The notes: generated by a model from the sequence alone, not told the origin. A DNA stretch of 64,000 nt from Anthoceros angustus (GCA_010909165.1 VJWM01000025.1:1364001-1428000), one strand, 5' to 3'; shown: positions 7,150-64,000, numbered from the stretch's first letter. Program-made: numbers and translations.

Positions 7150-7739
7150 CTAATCCTCATCCTCGGCCTCGTTGTCGGCGATATTGAAGTATCGCAATTC
7201 ATACATGTTCCTGTCCTTATTGGAGGCTATGACTCGCAGCCAGTCCCTCACGTTGTGCTTCTTCAAGTACTTCTTCGTCAAGTACTTCAAGTACCTGCAA
7301 ACAGCCACCAGGGGCGTCCTTCACATCTGAACAGCAAAGAAAACCCTGACCGCAAAACTAACATAACAGGCCATCCAGCGGCACGCTCAGTCTGACCTAA
7401 AGAGCAGGGGTGCTGCTACCAACAAATTCCAAACAATTGCCAACAGCTACAAATCCCAGACAATCCCCCACAGCTAAGCCTCTCAACTAACCTCTTCGAG
7501 AACGCAGCCTCGGAGGTGACGCTTATTCTGTTGTTCTGACGCGCGATCGTGACGATGTCCCCCAGGACGCCCGCCTTGCCTCCAACCTTGATCCGCTCTT
7601 GTAAAAATTTCTCGAAGGACGCAATGTCCATGATCTTGTCCTCCACTGGCTTCCCGCAGTCGATGGTAAAGGTGGAAGACCTCTTCTTACTCTTGACACC
7701 CTGGCCCTTCTTGGCCGCAGCCGCAGCAGGTGGCGCCAT
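7150..7739 (-). CDS. RPL22: 60S ribosomal protein eL22, 2 coding exons, 130 aa
   Basis: Exon 7739-7492 reads [55 protein letters not shown] intron 7491-7295. Exon 7294-7150 reads [47 protein letters not shown]. The frame is intact. Confidence 0.97.
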
Positions 7740-9151
7740 CGCTACAACAAACCTGCTGGGACAACAATACCTGAACGGAAAGTAATGGACGGAACTGCGG
7801 TCCAAATCCCGTGGAGCAGAACAGACCAAAACCCTGATCCTGAATTGCCTGTGATGAACAGGGTGAGTTGCCCCGATCACGATCCCAGGTGAACGCGCAC
7901 CGCCAGTTCTGTCGGCTCGGCACTCTACGTAGGTAGAACCGATAATACCGATAGTGGTACATAAGATCTAATTTTGCCTAAAATTTTGTTCAATTTTGTG
8001 TATCCACGCAGCTCACGACTTCGATACCGTCTTCGGCATGATCCCCTGTTCAGAGAGGAGAGACAACATTCCAACATCCCGCTGTGCAACGCTTTCTGGC
8101 TGGCACTGGCTCCAATACTGGTGACCTCATTTCTAGTGACTTTTGGCATGGTGTTACCAATGTTTGATTCTTCGTTCAGCCTACACAGTATTTGCAGTAT
8201 CACAGAGAGCTCGAAGAATACATCCCAGTCCAGCCTTCTCTACAAGCTTCTCATGTAGGCGGAGACACTGATCACACGTTAGTCTGTCACCCGTTGACAG
8301 CCCTTTATACAAATATCTGCATCACAAGAAAGGGAGCGAGGCGATTAACGCCATGGCACACATCCACATGGAAGGATGACTCAATGAGTCACCTTGGACT
8401 GGCGAGACATCAACTCACTTCATCAGAATGTCGTGATAATGTGAGTCCAGGCTATGATCCAGCAGAGAATCAACATCTTTGACAGCCATCAATGCACGGT
8501 GGACGACCAGCCAATTCGCAGACTGATCACAAAACGGGACAAGGATGTTGGAAGCTCAGCCTCCTCCCGCTCGTCTCACCACCGGAATTGCGAAATTTAG
8601 GTTTCTCTCACCTTACACGAATCATCCCTCGTCTTCGTCGGAGGATCCTCCAAGGACGTTCTCAGTGCCTCGTTGAACAAAGATCTGTCAACACAACGAT
8701 TCCGAGTCAGCCCAGGCTCCAAATCAGCCTCATGATTTTGTCACACAAAGCTGGCTCAAGGTAACCACAATTGTATCAATCGATCCACTCTGCGAGATTT
8801 GTGCTCTATCCGGTTGATGATTGCTTCTGCGCTTTCCGTCTCCACAAATTTCTCTGCCTCCAGATGGCCGTCATCATCGTCAGCCATGTGCAGCGGGAGC
8901 CTGGAGGTTTTCACGGGTTGTATGAGGTTGCTCAATTTGGCCAAGGTTCTGCCGAGGAGCCTTGTTGTGAAATGTGCGGTCTCGTGTTATGCTCTGCACA
9001 TGGGGACAGCATGCCGGCTGAAACCAGCATCAGCTCTGTCGTCTTTCGGTCTCTACGAAGTCATGGTTTAGCAAAACACGCCACCACCTTCGAGCGACGG
9101 AGGGCTTAAGGAAAACCGTGTCTCCTTTTGCACAATTGGAGGATGCTTGGA

Positions 9152-47801: not shown

Positions 47802-48946
47802 CTTTCAAGTCCGGTTTTGCCATGACGTTAGCTTTCGGGAGCTCGTTAACCTTGCCCCTTCCTCTGACGGGCTTGCTCCTGAGTCCTCTTCTGACCAGCC
47901 TGAGTTCGATGCTTCTCCCTCTGAGTATCCCCAGGATGCTTCATATGAACTATCCCCTGCCCTTTTCCCCGTGGCGTTGGCGATTCGGTGGAATTACTCG
48001 GCCTTACTGTGCAATATAATGCGGACGTGCTGATCTCAAGCTCCATCACCTGCCCATACTATTGACTCGCAGTACCTGGCCCAGCCTCATTTCGAAATCC
48101 GAGTCGGTTGTTCGGCGGTTGCACTTACGCCGCGAGCAGATCGTGATCGCACAGTGTAGATGAGACAGATGACGCAATTTCTAAAGCCGATATACCAGCA
48201 GCTGATCCTGCAATGGATGATTTTGAGCACGTTCAGCATTTAGATCTCGGAGATCAACCCCTCTCACCTATTTCTGAACATGAGCAGGTTGATGAACAGG
48301 TTCACACTTATCTGGAGCCTGAACCAGCTGTGACTGAGCCTCCTGTTCTTGAACCTGCTATGGAAGAACGAAGATACCCCACCAGGTCGCGTCCTCCACG
48401 AGATCAATGGAGTGAACGACCTTATCAGCCTGAAGATTTTCGGCAGCCTCATTCAGCTCGACTCTGTGAGGCCTTCTCCACCAGCACTGTTCACCCTGCT
48501 GAACCACGCTCATATAAGGAGGCTATTAACGGCAAGGACAAGCATCACTGGATCCCTTCCATTCAAGATGAATACGATTCCCTCATGAAAAATGAAACAT
48601 GGGAACTGTGTCCTTTACCTGCCGGACGCAAAGCTGTGAGCTGTAAATGGGTCTTCAAACATAAGCTGAACGCACAAGGAGAGATTGCCAGGTACAAGAG
48701 TCGTCTTGTAGCCCGAGGTTTTTCTCAAGTGGCTGGAGTGGACTTCCATGAAACTTTCAGCCTGTAGAAAACACCAATCGTCCAGATGACAGCCTCGGCT
48801 GCGCAAAGAAGGGACTGGGACTTGGAACAAATGGATGTTTCAACGACTTTCCTCTACGGGGATCTTGAGGAAGACATATACATGGAACAGCCCGAAGGCT
48901 TTGTGGACCACAGGCATCCTACCAGGTGCAAGAAGGCGTTATGCGG

Positions 48947-50355
48947 TGTGGAGTGCCAAATCCAGTGTCCACTCTTGGCGGCTTGTTTTGCTTTTTTGGT
49001 CACGTTCTTGTTAAAGAGGGATGAGGAGGTTAGCCAATAGGCCATTTTCGGCCGTTGCATACAGTGCAATCCCCTGACCCTATCCGTTGGAGGACTGGAG
49101 TGGTCCGTCCGGCGGTCAGATGGAGTGGTCCGTCCTTCAGGAGGTCCGACGGAGTGGTCCTCTTGAGAGGTCAGGCGGAGTGGTCGTCAGGGGTCCGGTC
49201 AGCGGAGTGGTCCGTCCGGCGGTCAGGCGGAGTGGTCCGTCCTTGAGAGGTCGGCGGGTGGTCCGTCGGGCGTCACGGTCCGAGGTGGTACGGGGTGGTT
49301 TAGTTTGGTGGCATCGCTGGCATGGATCTCTTGTTTGGCGGGGAAGCGGTGGTGCAGAAGTCCGGCGTGATGAGCTACGTCCGTGCGGTTACCACGACCA
49401 GGGGTTAGGGTACATACATAGGGTTAGGATACATACATAGGCGGGTTAGGTTAGGTATGGGAGTATATAGGAAGGCTCATGCCCAAGACGTGACTATCCT
49501 GCACTGCTCAAGGCCTCCGTGCAGGCTCTTGCCTTCGTGGCTCGAGGAGGAGTGAGTTCTCATCACCGCAGGATTAATTGGTGGTAGAGGATGTAGAGCT
49601 CGTGACGAGCTCCGCCAACACGCTTGATGGGTGCACTGGGATGGACTCGAGCTCGTGAGGTGCATGGGTGATTTCAAAAGTAGACTAACCTTGAGGCCGC
49701 CGGAACGGAGGTGGAGTTGCAGTATGCGGTTACCGCAACGTGAAGCGGTCGCAGGGATTAGGAGGCGCTTTGGGGTGACTGGCGGAAGCCACCCTTGAGT
49801 CACTTTGGAACGGAGGTCGTGGAGTTGCGGTGGTCAAGCCACTTCTGCAGTAACGGCATCGGAGGGGATTAGGAGGCGCTTGGGGTGACTGGCGGAAGCC
49901 ATCCTTGAGGCCGGAACGGAGGTCGGGGTTGCTGCCAAATCTACTTCTCCGCAGAACGGAAGCGCCCGAAGAGGCAAAGCGGCCCGTGAATACATACAGA
50001 GATTGGTGTTTACCACCGGTGATGGACAAGAGAGGAGGGTCGCGCTGGCGTGTGTGTTGAGGTGAGTTGTGGCTTATGACAGGAGCTACCGTTGTGGGAG
50101 CACGATCGATGGAGGAACGCCGTTAAACCTGCTCCGTGGACTGGAGAAAACCCGGGGTTTGTGGGAAGGTTCAGTGGCCCGTCCGACGTAGTTGGGGAGG
50201 CACACTTAGGTTGTGCCGCCGACCCAACATGATGAAGTCCGAGCGTGTTGTAGAGCTTCAGTATAAGCACGATCATTCCCTTGGGAACAGACTCCTTACT
50301 ACAATGACACGGGATTGTGCGCGCCCGGCTGGCCGTCAGCGAAAGTCGCGCCACA
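48947..50355. mobile_element. Solo-LTR-like element Y (1.4 kb)
   Basis: Termini TGTGG..CCACA. Flanks TGCGG/TACGA are consistent with a decayed TACGG TSD in the Copia LYGLK motif. Internal GGAGTGGTCCGTCC repeats (49085-49270) and a direct repeat of about 110 bp (49750-49910). Confidence 0.75.
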
Positions 50356-50783
50356 TACGACCTCAAACATAGCGCACGAGAATGGTACAAGTGTATTGAC
50401 AAATACTTGAAATCTATTGGGTTCATCCCAAACCCTGCAGATGCAAACGTCTACATCTACAACAAAGGAGGATACATGGTTATCTTGGCTCTTTATGTCG
50501 ATGACGCGATCCTGGCGTCAAACAATCGGAAGCTGTTAGACTGGGTAAAAGGGATGCTCCACAAGCGCTATGACATGAAGGATATCAGTCCTCTTACCTT
50601 TGTTTTAGGTGTGCAACTCATCCGGACAGGACCAATCGTACTCTCATCCTGCACCAGACCAAGTACATTGGTGAGACTCTCCAAAGATTTAATCTGCAGG
50701 ATGCGAAGTCAGTGAGCACTCCCGGCAGCGTTGGTTTGAAACTTACCTCTATGCAGAGCCCTCAAGATGAGGTTGATCGCGAG

Positions 50784-53700
50784 TCGTGGGCGCCACCGAT
50801 GGCTACCGGCGCATAACAATCCGGTCGTTGTAGGAAGAAGTCCGCTCCAAGGGAATGATAGGCTCCGCTGCCGTTTGTGATTCTACTCACTTTGCGCCTG
50901 CTCACTCAACGCACACATACGCCTAACCGCAACGCTCACCGACAGTCTTGTGAGATGGCTAAACGCTTAGGGACCTGTCAGATCGCTCACATTCGCCACT
51001 CACACTCCTTTCCTCTCTCCACTCACGCCACACTCATCGCCTTAGAAAGACGCTGGTTACACGACCTCCTCCGCTGCTCCGCTGGCCTCTCCGTCCGGCT
51101 CAGACGCCTCCCGAGTTCCTCCGCCCACACGCCCACCGCTCGGCCGGGTCGCTGCTCGACGAGCACGGGTCACCGCCACCCTTCCCCGCACACACCACAA
51201 CACGCTAGGTCCGCCACCGTGACCCCGATCAATCTCCCGAGCGCCGTGCTCGCTGACTCAGACTCACGCTAGCAAGAAGACACACAAAGGTCTCGCAAGA
51301 ACGCGCATCAACACCAAGAGAAAGATGATTTATTCTGTAGCGCCTTAGCCCTCTTATACGCACGCCAAGGTCCGCCTTTATTACACCTCTATTCGAGCCG
51401 AGGGCCACCGTGCCCTAACCGCCTACTATCCTCCCTATTCCGCCTATCGCCTGGTGGTGGGCTGGATGGCCCCCGATTCCTTCTTGGCACCGCGGCCCAA
51501 AGCCGAGCCCCCGCCGGGCGCACCTAATCGGATGATCCGCGAGGCGGACCCTTCCTCTTCCCGAGGGTCTGCTGCCGCGCCACCGGCGGCTCGACAACGC
51601 GGCCACCACCAAGTCTTCCTCGCCTCCCTCTCTCTCTCTCCGGCCTCGCAGCGGGCCTCCAAGGGCTGGATCTCTGGGCCAGGACCGTGGCTCTCCACTC
51701 CCGAGTTTGGACCTCGTGACTGCCTCGACCGAGTCCGGACCTCTAGGTCCGGCTTCCTCCGGGTCCGGCCTCCGCCCGGCCTGAGTCCGGCCCCTGGGTC
51801 CCCTCGGGGTCCTGACCCAACCTCGGGTCCGGACCTCGTGGTCCTCTGGCCACTAGAGTCGATCCCTAAGTCCAGATCAGGGGCCGGACCTGATCCGCCT
51901 TTCTGAGTCCGGACAAAGTCCGACCTCGTGCCCCCGGCATGCCTCCTCACCGGCTGGTCACGGGTTCATCCATCGAGCCTCCCTTGGTTCCCGAATGCCC
52001 GCTGCACCCTTTCCCTTCCTCCAAGATCCTCCCTCTTCCTTCCATGCGAGGGTGCCGAGTGCTTACCTCCGCAGGCGACCTTCCTCCTCCCGCCTCCCGC
52101 CGCTTCCTCCTCGCCGGCCATCAAACAGCCCTAGGACTCCTGCAGGCCGTCCCGGTCCGTCCTCGCCTCCTTCCATCCTTCCGAAGTCCACCTCCCGCCT
52201 AGGGTGGCGCAGACCTCCAGCCTTGAGGAGCTCGCGTGGTAGGCGGTCGGAATCGACTTGCCAATCGCCTCCTCCACATGAGCCCGAGCACCCAGATTCT
52301 CCTCCAGGTGCTCCGAATCGAGCGCACCTCACCGCCTGCCTCCGCGGGCCAGCCGGACTTTGAGGCCAAGGCCGCCTACCTCTTGCAACCTTCGCCGCCG
52401 ACGCCTCTCCTCCCTGTTGTTCCACCTCCGCTTATGGGCCATGGAGCCGAGCCCTTCTCGCTTCTCGCAACCGGACGAGCAAGCTTGCCTCTCCTCCGTG
52501 CTTTCTTCCCTCTCTATTCTTTCCGGAGGTCCTCCACTTCCTTCTCCAGCGGGCGCAGATCCCCGTCCGACTCGGCTTCCTCCACATCCGCCGCAACCTT
52601 GCGACGCCGAACTCCTTGCACCGCCGCCATTCTCCTCCGTTTCAAGCGGAGCTGAGGCTACCTCTCGTCAAGTCTTGGATTCTCGCTGAGAACCCCCGCC
52701 GCTCCGATGCATCTTGGAGTTGCAACCCAAGGTGTCCTTGTTGTCCTCCAGCCTCCGCCGCCGCCTCTTCTACCTCCCGCACTGCACTCGAGGTCCCCAA
52801 TCTCCTCCGGCCTCCGCTCCCTCACTGCCGACTGCGGTTCCCGCCACTTGCTCGGCCTTCGATTGGCTGGCTCTCCGCCTCCTCCACCGGCCCGATCACG
52901 CCGAGTGATCGCGATCGCCTCGCCGTGGCCTCCGCCTCCTGGCCACCTTCACCGAGCCTCCGCCTTGGCTCGTCCCGGCCGCCTCCGCTGATCCCGCCTG
53001 CTCGCTGCGCCCGGCCCTTCTCGCCGGCCACGCCTCGCAGAGGTCCTCCGCCCGCTGGGCCTCTCCGCTCACTGCCTCCTCCTGAAGGAATTTGGTCCGG
53101 CCCTGCGGATGGACCAGACCTCCTCTCCGCCTGCTTCCTTCCTCAATCCGCCGAGAGCTTCGCCTTCCTTCTCGCCTCCTGGCCCCTCCAACCGCCTCCC
53201 GGAGGAGTACCATGCGCCCGGTGGCTTCCACCTCCGGGTCTTCGGCCATCCCGCAGACCAGAGCATACCGTCCATGAGCCAGACCGCCTGTGTTTCTTCC
53301 ACGGCCGGGTGAGGCTCCCACAAAGTCCGAGTGAGCCGATCTCGCCAAGGACCTCCATACCAGCCCCGAGTAAGTCCGGACGGGTTCTCGACCCAATCAG
53401 ACCCTTAGGTCCCGAGGCCGAGCTCGAGCTCCTTGGCCCTTTTGGTCAGCTCCTTCTCCGCCTCTTTCTCCCGGGCTCAGGAGGTGATGGAGTCCGGAGC
53501 ACGCCTTTTGCCCTTCCGCCGGGCGACGGCCCGATGCGCCGCCGCCGCTGTCCTCGCCTCGCGCGCCCTTTCTCGCCTCCCATCGCTTCCTCCGCTTGCC
53601 ACCCGCGGGGAAGAGGTACTGCACCGACCGGGTGCCGCGCTGGTAGCCGTGGTCTTGCGCCTTCGGCCTCGGTCCGGGCTCACCGAGTGATGGCCGGGCG

Positions 53701-55165
53701 GCTGGCCTGGGCCGCCTCGCTGATCGGGCCGCCGTTGGGGCAGAGGAGGGAGGGGAATTGCTTCCCATACCGGTGGTGAGGGGTCCGCTCCACGATGGAG
53801 TCCGAATCCTCCGCTGCCCTCCTCCCGAGTCCGCTTGGTCGACGACCGGCCTCCCTCCCCCGCCTTGCCTCCACTTCCCAGGGCCTCCAGCCCTTTCCCG
53901 AGCCAAGCCTCCTTCCTGAGGAGTTCAAATGCCCCATACATGGATCGTGCATGGGGATGCCTGATGGCTAAGGCCCCGAGCTATGAGCCTCGCTAAACCG
54001 GCGAAGATAATCCTTCCCCGCCTTCTTCCCCGCAGTGTGAATAATACTAGATTATCACCAAGGTGATCCACCTTGGTGAGTAGGTTCCAGGACAATGATC
54101 CGCCACCGCCTTACTCGACGTCAACAGCCTGGATATCGCCCAACCGCTGGTGGTCCGCTGCCCTGTGCCTTAGCATCGCCGCCGTGGTCGGCCCTATCTT
54201 CCCTTCGCCTTGAGGGGCCCGCACCACTCCCCTTCCTCCTTGGGCTAGGCCTCAGACCTCCAAGGTCCATCGCCTTGGTCCTCCCGGAGGTTCTTGACCG
54301 CACCTCCTTATTGACCGCCAAGATCTTCCGCAAACTCCCGACCAGAGTGACACTATCAAATGTCCGCACTATCCGAACACATCCAAATGCCACTCCCGCA
54401 CTCCTCCCGCCTCGGAGCTGAGCCCAAAGTCCGGATAGCGCCGGTCACAATGTTGCGCCCACAAGGTTCCATGGCTCCCAAACTTCCGCTGGCTTTTGGG
54501 TGCCATCGCCTTCTCCTCCCTTGGTTGCCGAGCTTGTCAGACCGCCGGGCACGCTGCGCCTTCGCCGCTGCTCACGCCCGACCTCAACGGTGAGCCGCCA
54601 AGGCCAAGACGTCGAGTGTCCCACGAGATACCGCCAGAGCCGGATCGGAGCGCAAGAGATCGCGAGAATTGTCTCGAGGTCGAAAATGACCTTCTTCCGC
54701 GACCACGCCGGAGTAACTCCTGGGCGGGAGGGCGCTTCTCGTCTGTGAATCGCTGAGGTCCGCATGGCTTACTCGCCCTTACGCGCCGCTGCCACGACTG
54801 CCCACGCTGCCAGCAGCCTGCGTGAATACCGCTATAACGGCCTCGCAAGGTTACGGCCCGACCGCAGATGCCCGCCTCCACCTGTGGTCGCCCACGTGGC
54901 CGCTTAGTCCGCCCACGCCCAACTCTAAGTTACTTTCCGCGATTTATCCCGCCTCGGTCCGGAGTGGGTCCGGACTTATCCTGCTACCCGCGCCATCGTA
55001 GGCCTAGGTACGCTCTCACTCCGAGTCCGAGTATACTCCGGAGTGCCATCCGGAGTGCTAACCGTGCTTATTTCCCCCTTTCTCGCCTCATTTTATCCTT
55101 TACTCCTACAAAAAAAACAAAACCCTACCTAATTTCTAACCCCCCAGGGAAGTCCGTAGTCCACA
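50784..55165 (-). mobile_element. Element Z: 4.4-kb GC-rich solo-LTR-like insert in the Copia D RT
   Basis: Ends T(C)GTGG..CCACA with CGAG(C)/TGAGC flanks. Removing it restores Copia DEVDRELMSMVPY. On the minus strand, TATAAG (51358-51353) is followed by AATAAA (51334-51329). No gag/pol. Confidence 0.7.
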
Positions 55166-56408
55166 TGAGCTTATGAGCATGGTGCCCTATAGGCACGCTG
55201 TTGGGTGCCTCAACTACATTAGTTGCTGGACACGGCCGGACATTCAACACTTGGCCAGTGCTGTTTCGCAATTCCTTGAGGATCCAGGCCAGACTCACTG
55301 GGTTGCAGTCAAGAGAATTCTGCGTAACCTTAAGGGTACTTCCACACTTGGACTCTGCTTCCGAGGCATAGATGAGACTGTTAGCTTGCAGGGTTATTGT
55401 GATGCGGACTGGGCGACAGATCCAGATCAAAGACGCAGCATCTCTGCTTATTGCTTCCTCCTATCTGGAGCAGCTGTCAACTGGAGCTCAAAGAAACAAG
55501 TTTCAGTAGCACTCTCCTCAACGGAAGCGGAATATAAAGCTCTAACAGATTCAGCAAAAGAGGCCGAGTGGGAACGCACTTTCCTTGCTGGCTTGAACTT
55601 TACACAGAAGATCCCTACCACCACCTATTGTGACAACATGCTCACTATTGCCCTGGTTGGGAATCCCCGCTTCCACGCACGCACGAAGCACATAGAAATC
55701 CACCATCACATTGTGAGGCACTCAGTGGAGCGGAAGGTTGTTAGCATCGAGCATATCCCTACAGAGGTGAACACGGCAGACATCCTCACAAAAGTCTCAC
55801 CCCACGCTCACACAATTTTCATGAAGCCACAGGCTTGTGTCTAACCCCTACCCGCCACCTCTTCTCTGCACTATTAGGGTGGAGCGATATTTGATCCGTG
55901 GATGAAGCTCGGATCGCCTGCTCTGTCACGGGATTACTCGTCCTCAAGGCGCAAGCGACCAAGCGCTTCTTCAATCCTTCTTCTCTTGCAGTCTTGGGCG
56001 TTGGGGCCTTCACCCCATGACGATGGCGATCCTCGCCTCACGCTGATCGAGCATTGCATAGCTTGCCGCTTCCGTTGCTCGTGTCGCCGCTGGTCTCTCT
56101 TGGTCTTCTCTTATCGTTCCTTGGCGTGAGGGCACACCGTAATGGCCAAGGTGCACATATTCACCATCAGCAGAAGCGCGCCAGCCATCTTCGCACCTTC
56201 GTGTCCCCGTCTTTAGTCGCGTTTAACGCCTATCTCCTAACCAGTGTCGTGGTTAAGGGGGCGTGTTAAGATAACCCCCGTTAGGGTTATGTTTATATAA
56301 CCAGCGATCATGGTTAGTTTAGTTTAGGGTTAATATCCAAAGGACACTTAGGCTTGTATATAAGACATACTTTCTTATGTGTGTATTAATTCCTTTTTTG
56401 CTTGTGCT

Positions 56409-59400
56409 CATATATTTTGTCTGCTATGCCTAGCAACTTGCTCTCTTCACACGTTCGTGCCGAGGATTGCCGCTTGCCGCTTATGAGCTCGAGTCACCTT
56501 CGCCTACTCGGCTTCCTCGTGTGGACGCCTATGGGTACTTGTTCGAGATGGACGTTGAACATCCAAAGGCGGAACAGGAACTGCGCTTGCGCCTTATGAC
56601 AGCTATGGGTAAATGTCCCACGCTCAGATCAATCGAGCTCGACCTCTAGGGCGTCAAATTGACGAGTGGTGGCAGGCGACGGTGTTCTTGGAAGGTCTTA
56701 ACTCGAATGCAGTAGTGGAATTGCTGGATTTGTGAGGGTACCGTGGGTTTGGAACAGGTGGAGTCTACATTGCACTGGCAGCTACCTTGCAATCGAGCCG
56801 CACCTTGCAAATTCTTAGTATGGAATGCACTGGCATGACTGTCGATGGACTGGGTCGCATAGCTGCAGCCCTGCAAGAGAATGCCTGGTGCTCCGCGGCT
56901 TGCTCTTTCTGGGAACCCGACCATAGGAGAAAGTGCCCGCAGCTTGTATCTTCTGGAGACACTCTAGTGGAAGGTGCTGGAGCAGACCACCTGGCTGACA
57001 TCCTGACTAGCACTCCCTTCGCGACCTGATTTCCCGATAGGCATGGATGAGGCGGGAGCATTGAAGATAGGGAATGCTCTGGCTCAAAACACCACGCTTG
57101 ACCACACATAGGATTTAACCGAAGTAAGCCAAAGCAGGGATAACGGCCATGCTGTTGGCCCGATCATTGACCCTGGTATGCAGGACGCAGAGCAGGAGGC
57201 TGGGAGTGTTCCCCAAGCCTCTTTCTGCCAACGAGTCTGTCAGACACCTCCAGACATATTTGGACCGGCCACGGGCCCATCGACGCTTCATTGGGAGAAG
57301 CTGTGCATGCATGCTGCGCGCCAACACCACTTTAACGCATTTCCAGCTATCTAGCTGTCTCATAAGCCAGGGATTGAGGACTGTGTGACAACAGCAGCAT
57401 CACTCGTGTGACAGTCCGACAGAATTACTCTAGCCATAACGACGACTACTTCAAACTGATGCCAATCCTGCAGAGGTGCCAGTTCGAAAAGTTTGCACCT
57501 GGTTCAGGAGCGGATCGTGCAACCTCTCGAAGATGTTTTCAGGTCGTTGCAGACCAATCGCTACCTCAAGAGTTGGTATTGGATGACTGGAAGGGTTGGA
57601 TGACGATATGTTTCGAGAGCTCATGCACTGCAGGTGAACACCAATCTGGAGCGTATATCTTTCGAAAACACTGCGTGGAAAAAGACAGGGAAAGGTGCTG
57701 CAGTGGATGAAGTGCTGCGGCAAAACAGGAATATAGAAGAGCTCTGGCAGGAATTCCCACAATGCCCGTCAAATCATGTCGCCTTGTACTTTGTGGATTT
57801 CCATACGCAGGTAAGCGGCATAGGGCATGTTGAATGTAGAGCGAGTGACGTGTATTGATATTGCTCATATCTCCGTACCGGTTAGGAATGATCACTAAAA
57901 TGATTTTGTTGCAGGCAAAACGACCATAAGAAACACTTTGATGAAGATGGAGACACATGAAGACTATGCTGAAATGGAACGCGAAACAATTTCGGAAGAG
58001 ATACCTCGAACACTTGGATTTGAAGTGAAGGTGATAAAAGATGCTCCGCATTAAGGATTACAATTTGGGACCTTGCAGGCCATAGAGTATCACGCGCTTC
58101 ATGATTTTGTTTTTCCTAATGTTAATAATTCTTCTGTCTTCTTATTTGTTACAATCCATTCAAGTTCGGTGGGAATTTTCAACCATGGATATGAAGGATA
58201 GAAAAGATTTGTGGAAGAATTTATTTATTGGTTAAAATTTATTGCTTCCAATGCGATTGGGTCAATAGGTGAAACCTTATGTACATGTAATCGTAACATT
58301 TGGTGACAAGCTTCAAGGGATAAGCATTCTTGTTGCAATATGTGAAGAGATGTTATTGGTGAAGAAAAGTTTAAAATTTGGTGGAGTTATCGTATGAACC
58401 TACTTTTATCAATGGACAAAGTTGGGAAGATGTGTATGCATTGGGCACTAGTATGGAGAAGAAGTTGCATCGAGTTGTTAGTAAGTTGGCCCAGTTCCCA
58501 ATATTTGTGAGCAAACAAGGATACATGTACAAAGGTGGGCTGAAGACCAACAAGGTACCCCAATCATTTCTATTGACAAGTTTAGTGAGTTATTCCATAA
58601 CACATGTAAGGTGGCATTAGAGCATCCACATTTCGGAGGATTATAAAAGATTTCTTTTGGATTTCATGGTAAAGGAGGATAGTTGGAAAGTGGTTGCATC
58701 CTTAAGGATTCCGGGAGATCATATATTTGTCTGCTATGCCTAGCAACTTGCTCTCTCACACGTGTCCGAGGAGCCGCTTGCCCTGCTGCGGAGCTCGAGT
58801 CACCTTCGCCTACTCTCTCGTCGGTTCCTCGTGGACGCCTATGGGTACTTGTTCGAGATGGACGTTGAACATCCAAAGGCGGAACAGGAACTGCGCTTGC
58901 GCCTTATGACAGCTATGGGTAAATGTCCCACGCTCAGATCAATCGAGCTCGACCTCTAGGGCGTCAAATTGCAGTGACGTGGCAGAGGCGACGGCGTTCT
59001 TGGAAGGTCTTAACTCGAATGCAGTAGTGGAATTGCTGGATTTGAGTACCGTGGGTTTGGAACAGGTGGAGCCTGCATTGCACTGGCAGCTACCTTGCGA
59101 TCGAGCCGCACCTTGCAATCTTAGTATGGAATGCACTGGCATGACTGTCGATGGACTGGGTCGCATAGCTGCAGCCCTGCAAGAGAATAGCAGCTCAGTG
59201 CTCCGCAGCTTGCATCTTTCTGGGAACCCGACCATAGAAGAAAGTGCCCGCATCTTGTATCTTTCTGGAGACACTCAAGTGGAAGGTGCTGGAGCAGACC
59301 ACCTAGCTGACATCCTGACTAGCACTCCCTCCCTTCGCTACCTGGGGATTTCCGATATAGGCATGGATGAGGCGGGAGCATTGAAGATAGGGAATGCTTT

Positions 59401-61052
59401 GGCATAAAACACCACGCTTAACCGACTACGGATAGGATTTAACCGACGTAAGCCAAAGCAGGCAGGGATAACGGCCATGCTGTTGGCCCGATCATTGACC
59501 CCCGGTGTGCAGGACGCAGAGCAGGAGGCTGGGAGTGTTGCTCCCAAGCCTCTTTCTGCCAACGAGTCTGTCAGACACCTCCGGCTAGACATATTTGGAC
59601 CTGGCCACGGGCCCATCGACGCTTCATTGGGAGAAGCTGTGGCCCGCATGCGCGCCAACACCACTTTAACGCATTTCAGCTATCTAGCTGTCTCAAGCCA
59701 GGGATTGGGACTGTGTGACAACAGCAGCATCACTCTTGTGACAGTCCGACAGAATTACTCTAGCCATAACGACGACTACTTCAAACTGATGCCAATCCTG
59801 CAGAGGTGCCAGTTCGTGAAAAGTTTGCACCTGGTTCAGGAGCGTGCGGATCGTGCAACCTCTCGAAGATGTTTTTGCAGACCAATCGCTACCTCAAGAC
59901 GTTGGTATTGGATGACTGGAAGGGGTTGGATGACGATATGTTTCGAGAGCTCATGCAGACTGCAGGTGAACACCAATCTGGAGCGTATATCTTTCGAAAA
60001 CACTGCGTGGAAAGACAGGGAAAGGTGCTGCAGTGGATGAAGTGCTGCGGCAAAACAGGGAATATAGAAGAGCTCTGGCAGGAATTCCCACAATGCCCGT
60101 CAAATCATGTCGCCTTGTACTTTGTGGATTTCCATACGCAGGCATAGGGCATGTTGAATGTAGAGCGAGTGACGTGTATTCATATTGCTCATATCTCCGT
60201 ACCGGTTAGGAATGATCACTAAAATGATTTTGTTGCAGGCAAAACGACCATAAGAAACACTTTGATGATGATGGAGACACATGAAGACTATGCTGAAATA
60301 ACAATTTCGGAAGAGATACCTCGAACACTTGGATTTGAAGTGAAGGTGATAAAAGATGCTCCCGCATTAAGGATTACAATTTGGGACCTTGCAGGCCATA
60401 GAGTATCACGCGCTTCATGATTTTGTTTTTCCTAATGTTAATAATTCTTCTGTCTTCTTATTTGTTTACAATCCATTCAAGTTCGTGGGAATTTTCAACC
60501 ATGGATATGAAGGATAGAAAAGATTTAGGAAGAAGAATTTATTTATTGGTTAAAATTTATTGCTTCCAATTGGACAATAAAACAAACCTTATGTGCATGT
60601 AATCGTAACATTTGGTGACAAGCTTCAAGGGGATAAGCATCTTGTTGCAATATGTGAAGAGATGATATTGGTGAAGAATAAGTTTATGAATTTGGTGGAG
60701 TTATCGTATGAACCTACTTTTATCAATGGACAAAGTTGGGAAGATGTGTATCCATTGGGCACTAGTATGGACAAGAAGTTGCATCAAGTTGTTAGTAAGT
60801 TGGCCCCAGTTCCCAATATTTGTGAGCAAACAAGGATACATGTACAAAGGTGGGCTGAAGACCAACAAGGTACCCCAATCATTTCTATTGACAAGTTTAG
60901 TGAGGTATTCCATAACACATGTAAGGTGGCATTAGAGCATCCTCACATTTCGGAGGATTATAAAAGATTTCTTTTGGATTTCATGGTAAAGGAGGATAGT
61001 TGGAAAGTGGTTGCATCGTACCTTAAGGATTCCAGGGAGATCATATATTTTG
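56409..61052. repeat. About 2.3-kb tandem duplication of the LRR-Roc-early COR region
   Basis: Units start at 56409 and 58720. The junction motif CATATATTT(T)G occurs at 56409, 58720 and 61042. Confidence 0.9.
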
Positions 61053-62149
61053 AGATATCGGGGCTTGTGGTGCTTAACCTCCAATGGCTGGAAATGGGGG
61101 TTTTTGGTCAATTGATTGGAATATTTGGCGAACCTGGTGATGGATGAGATTGGCTTCAAAATGGGTTTATAAGCAAGTGTCGGTTGAGCAAGCTTCTAAA
61201 GATGTCTTTGAACAAGGTTGGGCTTGAAGAGACCATTGTGAGCGAAGAATAATTTATCCAACTCCTTCTTGAGTTACACCTTTGCTTGGGAAGTAGAGAT
61301 GGAGAAGATCAAGTGCGTTACTTTATACTAACATGCATGTATGGAGAAGAAGATATAGCAAGAGTAGACCGCCAACTAGAATGGCCTGCAAAGGATGATT
61401 CTACTGATTACATCTTTATCGGTTTGCGTTTACAATGTGATGATCAAGATTGCACATTTCTCACACCAGGATTTTTCCCTCGGTTGCAAGTATGTAACTC
61501 TTTCAAAGATGAATTTTTCCTTAGTCCTACTCGCAACAGTGGTTTTTGAATGTTTTCTGTTATTGACCACGTCTACATTGTTTTTGTCTATATGTGTGAT
61601 AGGTTTTATTGTACACCTATTGTTTGGAGAAAGGTTGGTTGATGAGGATGTTAGATGCATTGATTCGACCGTAAAGCTGCAGCCGAACATGCTTCTCATA
61701 TTTGCAGAGTTTCTTGATATCTTTGTAGAATTTAATGCAGAAATAGGTTGTTACATAAATATATTAGCTCGATCCACCCAAGGTTATTTGAGGTCCTTAT
61801 CGTTCTTGCAAGAGCATATTGTATCTCAAATTCGTTCATTTTGTGCTTATGAGGTTGTGCAGGGGTTACCTTAGTTGAAGGTGTCCCGAGGCGTGAATGT
61901 GTAGTGTCCCTCACGCCATGTAGACACAGAAACATCAGTGCATTCTGATAGATAAGCTTATCAAGGAAGTGGCTACTACAAAAGAAAAAGGCTATGCACA
62001 CTACACGCAGTCTTGGGGAGCTCTCTCCATCAGTACACAAGGTCCGCCACTTATTTTAAAGGCCAACAAGGAGTATGCAACCGTGGTAGATGGGCACGTC
62101 ATCTTGGGGCGAAAAAGGGATCTGGCTAGAGCCGAAGTAGAGTATGAAG
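56450..62149 (+). pseudogene. TORNADO1-like Roco gene (RI-type LRRs, Roc GTPase, COR) with an internal 2.3-kb duplication and several frame disruptions
   Basis: LRRs: LRSLHLSGN, LRYLGISDIGMDEAGALKIGNAL, NTTL, LKTLVLDDW. Roc: PVKSCRLVLCGFPYAG|KTT (intron 57811-57914), RTLGFEV, IWDLAG, EYHALHDFVFP, VTFGDK. COR: EIIYFEISGLVVLNLQW, RLQCDDQDCTFLTPGFFPRLQV, GVTLVEGVPRRECV. These parallel Arabidopsis TRN1 motifs. The N-terminus abuts a Copia LTR. Whether the lesions are biological or consensus errors is unresolved. Confidence 0.85.
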
Positions 62150-62217
62150 GTTAGTATTTCTGAACCATCTGAATGCGTTTGAATGTCCTGGTTTTCGAGA
62201 AGTAGTTGCTAGTAGGA

Positions 62218-62628
62218 TGGCTGCCAAATTTGTAGTATACATCGTTCCTTGCATGCTCTAAGGTTGCACTTGTTGTAGGATCGAAATCAAAAAGCGTCTT
62301 GGAACTCCTACAGCTATCTCGCAAGTGCAGGCAGTAGGGTGAGTCAACATGAGTGTTATCCTAATAAAGGTGGAAAGAAAATGGAGAGGTTTGGCAGTGA
62401 TTGTGAGCATAGAAGAGGATGACTGCCAAATTTGTAGTATACATTGTTCCTTGCATGCTCTGAGGTTGCACTTGTTGTAGGATCGAAATCAAAAACAGCT
62501 TCTGTCGGGAACTCCTACAGCTATCCCCGCAAGTGCAGGCAGTGCAGCGTTTTGCAGTGTTATCCTAATGACAGTGTGGCAGCAGGCAAATGGAGAGGTT
62601 TGGCAGTGATTGTGAGCATAGAAGAGGA
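62218..62628. repeat. Local tandem duplication of about 200 bp covering the intron end and start of the caspase exon
   Basis: CTGCCAAATTTGTAGTATAC..GAGCATAGAAGAGGA appears twice, with AG acceptors ending at 62278 and 62480. Confidence 0.85.
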
Positions 62629-63049
62629 CAGACCTGGTGGAGCTGTCGACCGAGGGCAACTTGAACCTCTTCTCAAGAATTTGAAGTTCCATACTGATAT
62701 AGTGGTGAACCAATCTGAGAACGTCAAAGCTTATCTTAGGAGACTTGCCAAGCTCCCTATCCTGGCTAACGACGATTGCTTTCTGTGTTGCATTAATGCT
62801 CATGGGGGGATCGATGAAAATGGACGAGATTACATCCTCATAAGTGGAGCAGGTGGGGAGAAGCTATATGTTGATAATGATATCTTGAAGCCCATCTCTG
62901 AATCCAGGTATCTTGCAAACAAGCATAAGGTCTTTGTGATCAATGCTTGTCGAGGAAGTGGCAGCCTTATAACAATCAAGAAAGCCGAGGACTCTGAAGT
63001 TGAGAAGAGCCAAGTGGTGAGCAAGAGAGCCGGAGAAGTCCGAGCCCTG
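62481..63049 (+). CDS. Caspase-type (peptidase C14) p20 domain exon
   Basis: Open frame: WRGLAVIVSIEEDRPGGAVDRGQLEPLLKNLKF..DDCFLCCINAHGG..KHKVFVINACRG. Catalytic His codon at 62801-62803 and Cys codon at 62948-62950. Confidence 0.88.
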
Positions 63050-63840
63050 TCATGATGGGGTCACGCTGTATCGGGATCAGCGATTGTAGCAAGTCCATGT
63101 ACGTAGAGAGAGGATATCGGTAATATCCTAACATATAGAAATGTCATGTATTGTTAGCCATGGGTTTCCAGGTAGGTCGTGACGCAGAATTACCAATCGA
63201 TTTGCTGGATCATAACAAGGAGATTCGCGCGGGAGCTGGTGAGGGTGACTAGACCGGGAAAACACAATCATGGAAAACGATGGAAGGCGATGCATGGCAG
63301 GAGGGAGCAGCGACAGGAGAGCGACAGGCGACTAGGCGCGGGATACAAGAGGCAAGCGTGCTTGGCTTAGGATAGTCTTGAGAGTCTCTTTGAGCCAGAG
63401 GGAGTGACGAGCTCCTGGCCGCTGTAACCGTTAGTGAATGCCGAAAGCTTGCTTGGGAATTTCGAGTGGATGTCCGAGTCTGACATTTGGTTTTGGGTTG
63501 CGGCACTATGCCTGGCTCCTGTTGCGAACTCTCAAACTCACCACGTTCGATCGGCTGATAGACGCTGATTGAATGAGGCATTTTGGATGGGAATTTAGCA
63601 GGATTGTTGCTTTCTTTTTCTAATCAGCTCTCAACCATATGGGCATACGGGTCGTAGTTGAGCTGTTGATCATGACATGGACGCGTTGCGATTGCTATGA
63701 CCAGGGTTGTGCTGGTGTGTGTTGGACATGTCGCGTTGCTGCAAATGCCTGCAGCCGGTTAGTGGTGTCAGCACATGCACAAGCTGTGAGAACAGGAGAT
63801 GTTGTGCTATTCCGATGTCCAGCTGTTTTTGCACGACACC

Positions 63841-64000
63841 TAAGGTCTTTGTGATCAATGCTTGTCGAGGAAGTGGCAGCCTTATCACAATCAAGAAAGC
63901 CGAGGACTCTGAAGTTGAGAAGAGCCAAGTGGTGAGCAAGAGAGCCGGAGAAGTCCGAGCCCTGCATTCTGTGCGCGATTGTCTCATTGTTTACTCCACC
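63841..64000 (+). CDS. Repeat of the caspase NACRG/linker segment continuing into the start of a p10-like subunit, running off the window
   Basis: 63841-63964 repeats 62926-63049 and then continues in frame as HSVRDCLIVYST, aligning with the caspase p10 start (compare caspase-3 PVEADFLYAYST). Confidence 0.75.

What the first reader, a model, noticed from the sequence alone, without database searches (positions are those of the whole stretch)
56450..64000. Plant LRR-Roc-COR (TORNADO1-like) gene fused to a caspase protease domain: candidate sensor-dimeriser-protease system
Seen in sequence: RI-type LRRs, then a Roc P-loop (CGFPYAG|KTT), G2 (RTLG), G3 (WDLAG) and TRN1-like COR motifs (FLTPGFFPRLQV). 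After the COR tail (..RAEVEYE-G), a GTTAGT donor at 62150 and TTGTAG acceptors (62278, duplicated at 62480) join G+GA in phase. This gives YE-G-SKSKT.. in the same frame as the caspase exon when the 62480 acceptor is used. Established: TRN1 is the known land-plant Roco and has no protease domain; Roc-COR modules are GTP-regulated dimerisers; initiator caspases are activated by dimerisation. Inference: a one-polypeptide receptor in which LRR sensing and COR dimerisation switch on a caspase, analogous to an inflammasome. I do not know this architecture from plants. This copy is disrupted (an in-frame TAG near 56647/58957 in both duplicates, frameshifts, and an LTR at the 5' end), so intact paralogues may matter more.
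Basis: partly seen in the sequence, partly recalled or inferred. Interest (0 to 1): 0.95.

Follow-up and report, generated by a model that had tools for sequence, protein, structure and literature searches.

The report
Broken plant Roco-GTPase–caspase fusion gene copy
This stretch holds a damaged, partly duplicated copy of a land-plant gene that joins a TORNADO1-type sensor and GTPase switch to an animal-style caspase protease. I found no paper describing this combination, although relatives in other plant data carry it intact.

Summary

- **Roco part:** it is TORNADO1-like by profile and by two shared intron positions, both confirmed by spliced contigs.
- **Protease part:** its only solved relatives at E<=0.01 are animal caspases. 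It keeps AHG/ACRG and the first S1 arginine.
- **Fusion:** it is real in relatives. COR-B and caspase share one ORF in three contigs (L001, L002, L047) and in a transcript of the hornwort Nothoceros. By contrast, 40 TORNADO1-like loci have no caspase.
- **Junction in this copy:** no read joining 62149 to 62481 was seen.
- **State of this copy:** it is worse than described. It has a 2.3-kb tandem duplication, a 202-bp duplication over the acceptor, a 791-bp insert with 124-bp flanking repeats in the caspase exon, four in-frame stops and many small gaps. It is either a pseudogene or a badly assembled copy.

The scan noted the same family earlier at other loci of this genome. The proposed mechanism (dimerisation-activated protease) is inference, with weak support from one homodimer prediction. 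I found no paper describing the architecture.

The parts
55173..55844 (+). Flanking copia-type retrotransposon RNase H ORF (not part of the gene). It is the only TE evidence near the 5' end.
   Evidence: Weak RVT_3 hit and a typical copia C-terminus. RVT_2 pieces lie upstream at 48213-50715. No LTR pair was found.
56408..58718 (+). Tandem unit 1: LRRs, Roc and the first half of COR-A. It keeps the GT donor (CAG|GTAAGC) of the P-loop intron.
   Evidence: Aligns to unit 2 with 40 mismatches and 63 indels over 2261 nt. Profile hits fall at 57625-57818 (LRR) and 58085-58264 (Roc).
58719..61050 (+). Tandem unit 2, which continues into the rest of the gene.
58762..60141 (+). RI-type LRR region and the first half of the P-loop (..CGFPYAG). 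It is broken by TAG at 58957, TAA at 59405 and several frame changes (for example near 59959 and 60017).
   Evidence: Ribonuclease inhibitor hit at 7.4e-6. LRR profile hits. Contigs read C at 59405 and carry extra bases at 59959 and 60017.
60142..60238 (+). Intron splitting the P-loop between G and K. The GT donor is missing in this unit because of a 7-nt gap.
   Evidence: Spliced contig joint 60137>60235. Sequence. Unit 1 has GGTAAGC here. The same intron position occurs in TRN1-like L008 and L024.
60239..60583 (+). Rest of the Roc G-domain (KTT, RTLG, WDLAG, ..VFLFVYNP). It is frame-shifted near 60400 and between 60484 and 60530.
   Evidence: Roc-COR-A profile hits at 60295-60402, 60401-60484 and 60529-60582 lie in different frames. 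Contigs add AG after 60399, G after 60484 and T after 60491.
60584..61489 (+). G4-like TFGD and COR-A, ending in FLTPGFFPRLQ. In-frame TGA at 61145 and TAA at 61250.
   Evidence: Profile hits 2.6e-23 and 2.6e-19. Atlas COR-A clusters score 0.96. Stops located.
61490..61602 (+). Phase-0 intron (GTATGT..TAG) after RLQ, at the position shared with TRN1-like genes.
   Evidence: Contig joint 61489>61603, GT..AG. Sequence. L008 and L024 break at the same place.
61603..62149 (+). COR-B and the linker tail (..RAEVEYE-G). It passes through three frames (shifts near 61636, 61860 and 61929-61969).
   Evidence: COR-B profile hits 5.9e-11 and 6e-6 in two frames. The tail is homologous to the P0009 tail, which is continuous with a caspase (1e-9). 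Contigs add G after 61636 and A after 61929.
62150..62480 (+). Putative intron (GTTAGT..TTGTAG). It is lengthened by a 202-bp tandem duplication (62214-62415) that repeats the acceptor and the first ~135 nt of the caspase exon.
   Evidence: Sequence. Duplication 84% alike over 218 columns. Contig depth is about 0 at 62240-62416. No joint was observed, so the splice is inferred.
62481..63049 (+). Caspase p20 exon: YP..RGLAVIVSIEE, RPGGAVDRG (first S1 Arg), NAHGG (His), NACRG (Cys).
   Evidence: Peptidase_C14 1e-13. PDB hits are caspase-8, -2, -1 and -3/6/7 only.
63050..63840 (+). 791-bp insert of unknown origin that interrupts the caspase exon. It is flanked by 124-bp direct repeats (62926-63049 and 63841-63964).
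   Evidence: Repeats 99% alike. No other copy in the window. Zero contig depth at 63125-63832. A paralogue contig runs from 63047 straight into ..DCLIV...
63841..64000 (+). Repeated end of the p20 exon, continuing into the start of p10 (HSVRDCLIVYST). It runs off the window.
   Evidence: Translation. Aligns with D.L.VFST of the family.

Best explanation
The locus is a 5'-truncated, internally duplicated and probably non-functional copy of a gene family found in land plants, with at least one hornwort member. Members of the family consist of TORNADO1-type RI-LRRs, a Roc GTPase, COR-A and COR-B. The TORNADO1 C-terminal domain is replaced by a complete animal-type (C14A-like) caspase domain.

Shown:
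- the domain order in the window;
- homology of each part;
- two RNA-confirmed introns shared with TRN1-like genes;
- COR-B and caspase on one ORF in relatives;
- the breaks in this copy.

Inferred for intact members:
- The LRRs bind a ligand or a guarded protein.
- The Roc nucleotide state changes COR-mediated pairing.
- Paired C-terminal caspase domains become active by proximity, as initiator caspases do.
- They cut after acidic residues. Both S1 arginines are conserved in relatives; the first is visible in the window.

A role in immunity or cell death is a guess. It rests on the long, fast-evolving branches, the multi-copy state and a gasdermin-like gene that other notes report just beyond the window.
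For: Domains:
- LRR matches ribonuclease inhibitor.
- The Roc motifs can be read directly.
- Roc-COR-A and COR-B profiles, built mainly from TRN1-like loci (L001 and L002 included), map collinearly at 2.6e-23, 2.6e-19 and 5.9e-11.
- Two of those loci checked (L008, L024) hit Pfam LRR_6, Roc, COR-A and COR-B.
- A family profile finds the C. tepidum Roco COR domain as four of its six best PDB hits, E 0.03-0.1.
- Atlas look-alikes are Roc/COR-A clusters, 0.94-0.96.

Caspase:
- Pfam 1e-13.
- The only PDB hits at E<=0.01 are caspases.
- The intact relative P0001 aligns to caspase-3 over p20 and p10 at 1.3e-15.
- Its model matches caspase-3/7/6/8/9 and CED-3, TM 0.8-0.88.

Fusion:
- L001, L002 and L047 carry COR-B and caspase contiguously.
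- A Nothoceros transcript ORF does too.
- The window tail is homologous to P0009.
- Caspase-linked COR-B rows fall on one side of a branch, support 88/84.

Plant origin: a WAK-type kinase in the same window has plant best hits.

Transcription of the family: spliced contigs.

Breaks.

Dimer: ipSAE 0.75 against a best control of 0.15. This mark was reached by 21 of 30 proteins solved as pairs and 0 of 23 solved as single chains. The runs agree in at least 56% of contacts and pLDDT is at least 72. The interface is the last beta-strand, 413-423.
Against: - No contig was seen joining 62149 to 62481, so the fusion is not shown for this locus.
- Pfam finds no Roc, COR or LRR in the window's own pieces.
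- The AF2 model of a relative's Roc-COR failed, pLDDT 46.
- The indel-to-substitution ratio between the two units (63:40) is unnatural, and contigs mostly add bases that the assembly lacks. Many breaks may therefore be assembly errors and the copy may be less dead than it looks.
- The dimer pass may come from memory of solved caspase dimers.
- The COR-B tree joins long branches.
- Some relatives are degenerate: L002 lacks the catalytic Cys, and L001 has a degenerate G3 motif.
- No functional data exist.
Confidence: 0.6

Rival explanations
1. The gene is intact and functional in the organism. On this reading the small gaps, the stops and perhaps the three duplications are artefacts of a long-read assembly that was poorly polished in a multi-copy region.
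For: - The two units differ by 63 indels against 40 substitutions.
- Ten of the twelve listed indels in contigs are bases the assembly lacks. Several sit in homopolymers or short repeats, and several are present in the other unit, such as GGAACGCGA and TGC.
- Contigs read CAA where unit 2 has TAA at 59405.
- Other notes on this genome report the same pattern at other loci.
Against: - Long ORFs elsewhere in the window are intact: a 387-aa kinase ORF and a 255-aa ORF. The assembly is therefore not noisy everywhere.
- Merging the two units does not restore a frame.
- Four stops are substitutions, and the TAG is shared by both units.
- Gaps of 7-9 nt and three structural duplications are not typical consensus errors.
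- The contigs may come from paralogues.
Confidence: 0.25
2. There are two separate genes: a decayed TORNADO1-like Roco gene ending near 62150, and an independent stand-alone caspase-like gene starting near 62440.
For: - No joint across 62150-62480 is listed, and contig depth there is about 0.
- Stand-alone caspase-like genes of this family exist (L003, L004, L006).
- ORF 62444-63055 has its own possible TTG start.
Against: - The window tail 61969-62149 is homologous to the linker that is continuous with the caspase in P0009.
- Three contigs and a hornwort transcript carry the fusion.
- The usual TRN1 C-terminal domain is absent here, whereas L008 and L024, the TRN1-like loci read through, carry one.
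- Donor and acceptor join in phase.
Confidence: 0.08
3. The caspase or the whole locus is foreign: contaminating animal DNA, or a recent transfer that is not part of the plant gene set.
For: The nearest named look-alikes of the caspase and COR pieces in the Atlas are animal clusters. The nearest solved structures are animal caspases.
Against: - The same 64-kb window carries a plant WAK-type kinase with a plastocyanin-like (phytocyanin-type) ectodomain ORF (Pfam Cu_bind_like, E 7.6e-4) and copia elements.
- The Roco half shares profile and intron positions with plant TRN1-like genes.
- Related caspase domains occur in Marchantia and Nothoceros.
- Identity to any animal caspase is only about 25-35%.
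Confidence: 0.03

Closest known systems
TORNADO1 (TRN1/LOPPED1), the land-plant Roco protein, represented here by 40 TRN1-like loci L007-L046
   Same: RI-type LRRs, Roc, COR-A (..FLTPGFFPRLQ) and COR-B in the same order. The intron between G and K of the P-loop and the phase-0 intron after RLQ are both shared. The non-canonical G4 (T-x-x-D) is also shared.
   Different: L008 and L024, the TRN1-like loci read through, continue after COR-B into a non-protease C-terminal domain of about 300 aa, and none of the 40 has a caspase. Here and in L001, L002 and L047 that domain is replaced by a caspase. Caspase-linked members sit on much longer branches (0.7-1.2 against a median of 0.05).
Other Roco proteins: C. 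tepidum Roco, LRRK1/2, MFHAS1, DAPK1, and brown-algal LRR-ROCO candidate immune receptors (PMC11378527)
   Same: A central Roc-COR tandem with N-terminal repeats and a variable output domain. COR mediates dimerisation. DAPK1 and invertebrate Rocos with Death or CARD domains (Atlas clusters) link Rocos to death signalling.
   Different: The known outputs are kinases or death-fold adaptors. The papers searched describe no Roco with a caspase domain. Sequence similarity to CtRoco is marginal (E 0.03-0.1).
Animal caspases (MEROPS C14A), especially the initiators caspase-8, -9 and -2
   Same: Full p20+p10 fold in relatives. His (AHG), Cys (ACRG), both S1 arginines, and the GxxFIQ and D.L..YST motifs. 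A predicted dimer through the last beta-strand. All the best sequence and fold matches are caspases.
   Different: Gln of QACRG is Asn. There is no CARD or DED prodomain; the recruiting module is a covalently attached LRR-Roc-COR. Identity is only 22-26%. Activity and specificity are untested.
Inflammasome and apoptosome sensors (NLRC4/NLRP1, Apaf-1) and bacterial or fungal NTPase-caspase-like conflict systems (PMC7159879)
   Same: The logic: a repeat-domain sensor plus a nucleotide switch controlling a clan-CD protease by induced proximity.
   Different: The switch here is a Ras-like Roc GTPase with a COR dimeriser, not a STAND ATPase ring. Sensor and protease sit on one chain. No adaptor is needed. 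Everything beyond the architecture is inference.
Other bryophyte caspase-type proteins: Marchantia alpha/beta-hydrolase (SERAC1-like)-caspase proteins P0010 and P0012, and the stand-alone genes in L003, L004 and L006
   Same: The same caspase subfamily (33-46% identity), with YP..RG.AVIISME, CF.C..SAHG and KPKVFFINACRG motifs.
   Different: Different N-terminal partners, or none. This shows the caspase module is shuffled among plant architectures.

Membership tests
Roco (Roc-COR) proteins | Ras-like Roc G-domain with P-loop, switch I Thr and DxxG | tested here: met
   GFPYAG|KTT (spliced), RTLG and WDLAG can be read in the window. Profile hits at 60295-60582 score 1.8e-4 to 4.5e-7. G4 is TFGD, as in TRN1-like T-H-x-D. 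The frame is broken as assembled.
Roco (Roc-COR) proteins | COR-A directly after Roc | tested here: met
   Profile mainly from TRN1-like loci (L001 and L002 included) scores 2.6e-23 and 2.6e-19 on 60584-61501. L008 and L024 hit Pfam COR-A at 3.6e-7 and 2.3e-8. CtRoco COR is among the top PDB hits at E 0.03-0.1. Pfam on the window's own piece finds nothing.
Roco (Roc-COR) proteins | COR-B after COR-A | tested here: met
   COR-B profile scores 5.9e-11 (61656-61865) and 6e-6 (61853-61936), in two frames. L008 COR-B hits Pfam at 1.5e-8, above the cut-off.
TORNADO1 family | RI-type LRR N-terminus and shared gene structure | tested here: met
   Ribonuclease inhibitor hit at 7.4e-6. The P-loop intron and the intron after RLQ lie at the same positions as in L008 and L024, and both are confirmed by spliced contigs. 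Arabidopsis TRN1 itself was not available for comparison.
TORNADO1 family | TRN1-type C-terminal domain after COR-B | tested here: not met
   After COR-B the window has a linker and a caspase exon. L008 and L024, the TRN1-like loci read through, have a different C-terminus, and none of the 40 has a caspase.
Caspases (Peptidase_C14, subfamily C14A-like) | Significant match to the family model and nearest relatives are caspases | tested here: met
   Pfam 52 bits against a cut-off of 21.4. The 17 PDB sequences at E<=0.01 are all caspases; no metacaspase or paracaspase appears.
Caspases (Peptidase_C14, subfamily C14A-like) | Catalytic His-Cys dyad | tested here: met
   NAHGG and NACRG in 62481-63049 align with SHG and QACxG of caspase-8.
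Caspases (Peptidase_C14, subfamily C14A-like) | p10 subunit with the second S1 arginine and GSWFIQ-like motif | not testable with these tools
   Only the first 12 residues (HSVRDCLIVYST) lie inside the window. In the relative P0001, SLRN..GTAFIQ aligns with SWRN..GSWFIQ of caspase-3.
Caspases (Peptidase_C14, subfamily C14A-like) | Cleavage after Asp | not testable with these tools
   Inferred only from the conserved S1 arginines. Gln283 is Asn.
Sensor-activated caspase platforms (inflammasome-like) | Protease activated by induced pairing | tested here: inconclusive
   The homodimer of the P0001 caspase domain scores 0.75 against a best control of 0.15. The mark was reached by 21 of 30 paired and 0 of 23 single-chain proteins. 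Contacts agree in at least 56% of cases and pLDDT is at least 72. The pass may come from memory of solved caspase dimers.
Functional gene | Open reading frame across all exons | tested here: not met
   Stops at 58957, 59405, 61145 and 61250; at least eight frame changes; three duplications. Some of these may be assembly errors.

The most novel reading that the evidence does not exclude
Intact members of this family are single-chain, GTPase-gated caspase receptors of non-seed land plants. On sensing a ligand they pair through COR, switch on a true Asp/Glu-directed caspase and process a neighbouring gasdermin-like pore protein. That would be a pyroptosis-like death pathway in plants, which are said to lack caspases.
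Probability: 0.15. Interest if true: 0.92.

Novelty: new variant of a known kind. Interest (0 to 1): 0.68.

Why it matters
Plants are usually said to have metacaspases but no caspases (for example PMC12521494), and TORNADO1 is regarded as their only Roco. A family that puts an animal-type caspase fold, with both S1 arginines, behind a TRN1-type LRR-Roc-COR would do three things:

- It would add a new output domain to the Roco family.
- It would give a directly testable link between a GTPase switch and a death-type protease.
- It would bear on the origin and loss of caspases in the green lineage.

This copy is not the one to study. Its value is as one more family member, and as a copy lying next to a reported gasdermin-like gene.

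Tried and rejected
- Pfam on the window's own LRR, Roc and COR pieces, and on L001 and L002 pieces, found nothing or only weak hits (Arf 0.056, COR-A 0.015).
- phmmer of the L001 Roc-COR ORF against PDB found nothing.
- The word-index protein search with the caspase exon found nothing, and with the L001 Roc-COR ORF found only itself.
- The AF2 model of L001 Roc-COR-A from a 4-row alignment had pLDDT 46. I did not use it for fold search.
- The metagenome scan with caspase patterns gave no relative.
- The bacterial and archaeal genome scan with caspase patterns gave no relative.
- Merging the two tandem units, keeping every base present in either, did not give an open frame.
- Neither blastn nor the repeat finder found an LTR pair for the upstream copia, or any other copy of the 791-bp insert.
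- blastn of the fetched loci L001-L006 against the window gave no DNA-level match, so I could not tell whether the SRR33208241/2 data come from the same species.
- Read laying listed no joint for 62149>62481. Because many rows were not shown and the contigs are short, this is no evidence against the splice.

Full report
**What is there.** On the + strand from about 56408 to the window end lies a string of homologous coding pieces in the order LRR, Roc, COR-A, COR-B, caspase.

- The LRR piece 58979-59407 matches ribonuclease inhibitor (1dfj, E 7.4e-6).
- The P-loop is split. ..CGFPYAG ends at 60141 and KTTIRNTL starts at 60239. A spliced contig of a public run of the same organism joins these points (60137>60235, placement free by 7 nt; sequence).
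- RTLG and WDLAG follow.
- COR-A ends in FLTPGFFPRLQ at 61489. A GTATGT..TAG intron runs to 61602, and this joint is also seen in contigs.
- After COR-B and a tail (..RAEVEYE) there is GTTAGT at 62150, with TTGTAG ending at 62278 and again at 62480. Only the second acceptor gives an open G-SKSKT.. continuation.
- The next exon is a Peptidase_C14 domain (Pfam 1e-13) with RPGGAVDRG, NAHGG and NACRG.

**The Roco half.** Pfam does not recognise the window's own Roc and COR pieces, so I took an indirect route.
- A scan of metagenome contigs with the COR-A end motif returned 40 loci. All carry Roc-COR-A and/or COR-B homologues, and none has a caspase.
- Two that I read through, L008 and L024, have RI-type LRRs, a P-loop split by an intron between G and K..FLTPGFFPRLQ followed by an intron, COR-B, and then a non-protease C-terminal domain. 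They hit Pfam LRR_6, Roc, COR-A (3.6e-7, 2.3e-8) and COR-B (1.5e-8). I treat them as TORNADO1-like.
- Profiles built mainly from these loci (L001 and L002 included) map collinearly onto the window: Roc 60295-60582, COR-A 60584-61123 (2.6e-23) and 61256-61501 (2.6e-19), COR-B 61656-61865 (5.9e-11) and 61853-61936.
- A small family profile finds the C. tepidum Roco COR domain as four of its six best PDB hits, at marginal E-values.
- Atlas look-alikes are Roc/COR-A clusters.

The TRN1-like reading is supported, except that the TRN1 C-terminal domain is missing.

**The caspase half.**
- The window exon finds only animal caspases among solved structures at E<=0.01: caspase-8, -2, -1 and -3/6/7.
- An exhaustive phmmer search of 1.8 billion representatives found no protein more than 46% identical.
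- The best hits include Marchantia alpha/beta-hydrolase-caspase proteins.
- The intact relative P0001 aligns with caspase-3 over p20 and p10 (1.3e-15) and keeps both S1 arginines, His, Cys and GxxFIQ.
- Its AF2 model is confident over the caspase domain and matches caspase-3/7/6/8/9 and CED-3 at TM 0.8-0.88.

**Is the fusion real?**
- In contig L001, LRR tail, Roc-COR-A and one 450-aa ORF holding COR-B, linker and caspase lie in a row.
- L002 has COR-A end, an intron, and one ORF with COR-B and caspase. Its catalytic Cys is lost.
- L047 has COR-A, COR-B, tail and caspase within 1.7 kb.
- P0011 and P0204 are ORFs of a Trinity transcript of the hornwort Nothoceros aenigmaticus that hold COR-B, linker and caspase.
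- The window tail 61969-62149 aligns end to end with the first 60 residues of P0009, which run directly into its caspase (E 1e-9).
- In a COR-B tree the caspase-linked rows fall on one side of a branch (88/84). Their branches are long and the join may be an artefact.
- For this locus the 62149>62481 joint was not among the joints listed. Contig depth is about 0 between 62240 and 62416 and present on both sides.

So the fusion is shown for the family and inferred for this copy.

**State of this copy.**
- Units 56408-58728 and 58719-61050 are a tandem duplication of LRR, Roc and half of COR-A, with 40 mismatches and 63 indels.
- The first contig laid near the unit boundary carries 86 upstream letters that do not fit the window. 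This suggests that the true 5' part of the gene is absent.
- A 202-bp duplication repeats the acceptor and the exon start.
- The caspase exon is cut at 63049 by a 791-bp insert flanked by 124-bp repeats. A paralogue contig runs straight through into ..DCLIV...
- In-frame stops lie at 58957 (shared with unit 1 at 56647), 59405, 61145 and 61250.
- There are at least eight frame changes.
- Unit 2 lacks the GT donor of the P-loop intron.

The evidence on whether these breaks are real points both ways. The indel-to-substitution ratio, the excess of bases that contigs add to the assembly, and repair of some breaks in the other unit all point to assembly error. On the other side, long ORFs elsewhere in the window are intact, merging the units does not open the frame, and four breaks are substitutions. 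I put about 0.65 on real decay.

**Origin.** The same window holds a WAK-type receptor kinase whose best hits are plants (Calypogeia 54%), a ribosomal L22e piece and copia elements. The organism is a land plant, probably a bryophyte. No close bacterial or archaeal relative of the caspase was found.

**Mechanism.** This part is inferred. It rests on what is established for Rocos (COR dimerises; nucleotide state changes the monomer-dimer balance, and in CtRoco GTP monomerises the protein, PMC11052575) and for initiator caspases (activation by induced pairing). From that I propose a single-chain sensor-switch-protease. A homodimer prediction for the P0001 caspase domain passed:
- score 0.75 against a best control of 0.15;
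- the mark was reached by 21 of 30 proteins solved as pairs and 0 of 23 solved as single chains;
- contacts agree in at least 56% of cases, and pLDDT is at least 72;
- the interface is the last beta-strand.

This pass may reflect memory of caspase dimers. The direction of GTP control and the substrates are unknown.

**Novelty.** Eight full-text searches found no paper describing a Roco-caspase protein or caspase-type proteases in bryophytes. Earlier notes of this scan report the same architecture at several other loci of this genome, and a gasdermin-like gene 2.7 kb beyond this window. I could not read that stretch.

Noticed in passing
window 926-3653 (-): A receptor kinase. The kinase ORF 1129-2292 scores Pkinase 4e-43 and its best hits are plant WAK-type kinases. 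The upstream ORF 2886-3653 has a weak plastocyanin-like hit. The same Cu_bind_like+kinase architecture occurs in Calypogeia and Ceratodon hits.
   Followed up: partly
L004 591-6749 (+), L005, L003 10001-12501 (+): Stand-alone caspase-type genes of the same family lie on the same strand 2.5 kb (L004) and 1 kb (L003) upstream of NB-ARC(-LRR) ORFs in other plant-like contigs. They could be neighbours, or one caspase-NLR gene.
   Followed up: no
P0010, P0012 and cluster members (Marchantia paleacea, M. polymorpha): Liverwort proteins annotated 'SERAC1' or 'caspase family p20 domain-containing' join alpha/beta-hydrolase domains to a C-terminal caspase-type domain. The caspase module is combined with several partners in bryophytes.
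   Followed up: partly
L002 607-1977: This Roco-caspase paralogue has ISGHG in place of NACRG (catalytic Cys lost) and MGHGG for the His motif. It is probably a pseudo-protease. In L001 the Roc domain has a degenerate G3 motif (NFHDG) and, if the splice site I inferred is right, Gln in place of the P-loop Lys.
   Followed up: partly
window 50900-55100: A very GC-rich block (up to 66% GC) with long spurious-looking ORFs on both strands sits inside a copia element, between its RT pieces (48213-50715) and its RNase H (55173-55844).
   Followed up: no
window 7416-7880 (-): An ORF with a ribosomal protein L22e domain (8.8e-21).
   Followed up: no
L008 8722-10125, L024 6243-7439: In the two TRN1-like genes read through, COR-B is followed by a C-terminal region of about 300 aa with no Pfam match. 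This is the part replaced by the caspase in the fusion family.
   Followed up: partly
window 62926-63964: The 124-bp repeats flanking the 791-bp insert begin with TAAG|GT. This could serve as donor in the first copy and acceptor in the second, and splicing there would restore the exon exactly. No read evidence either way.
   Followed up: no
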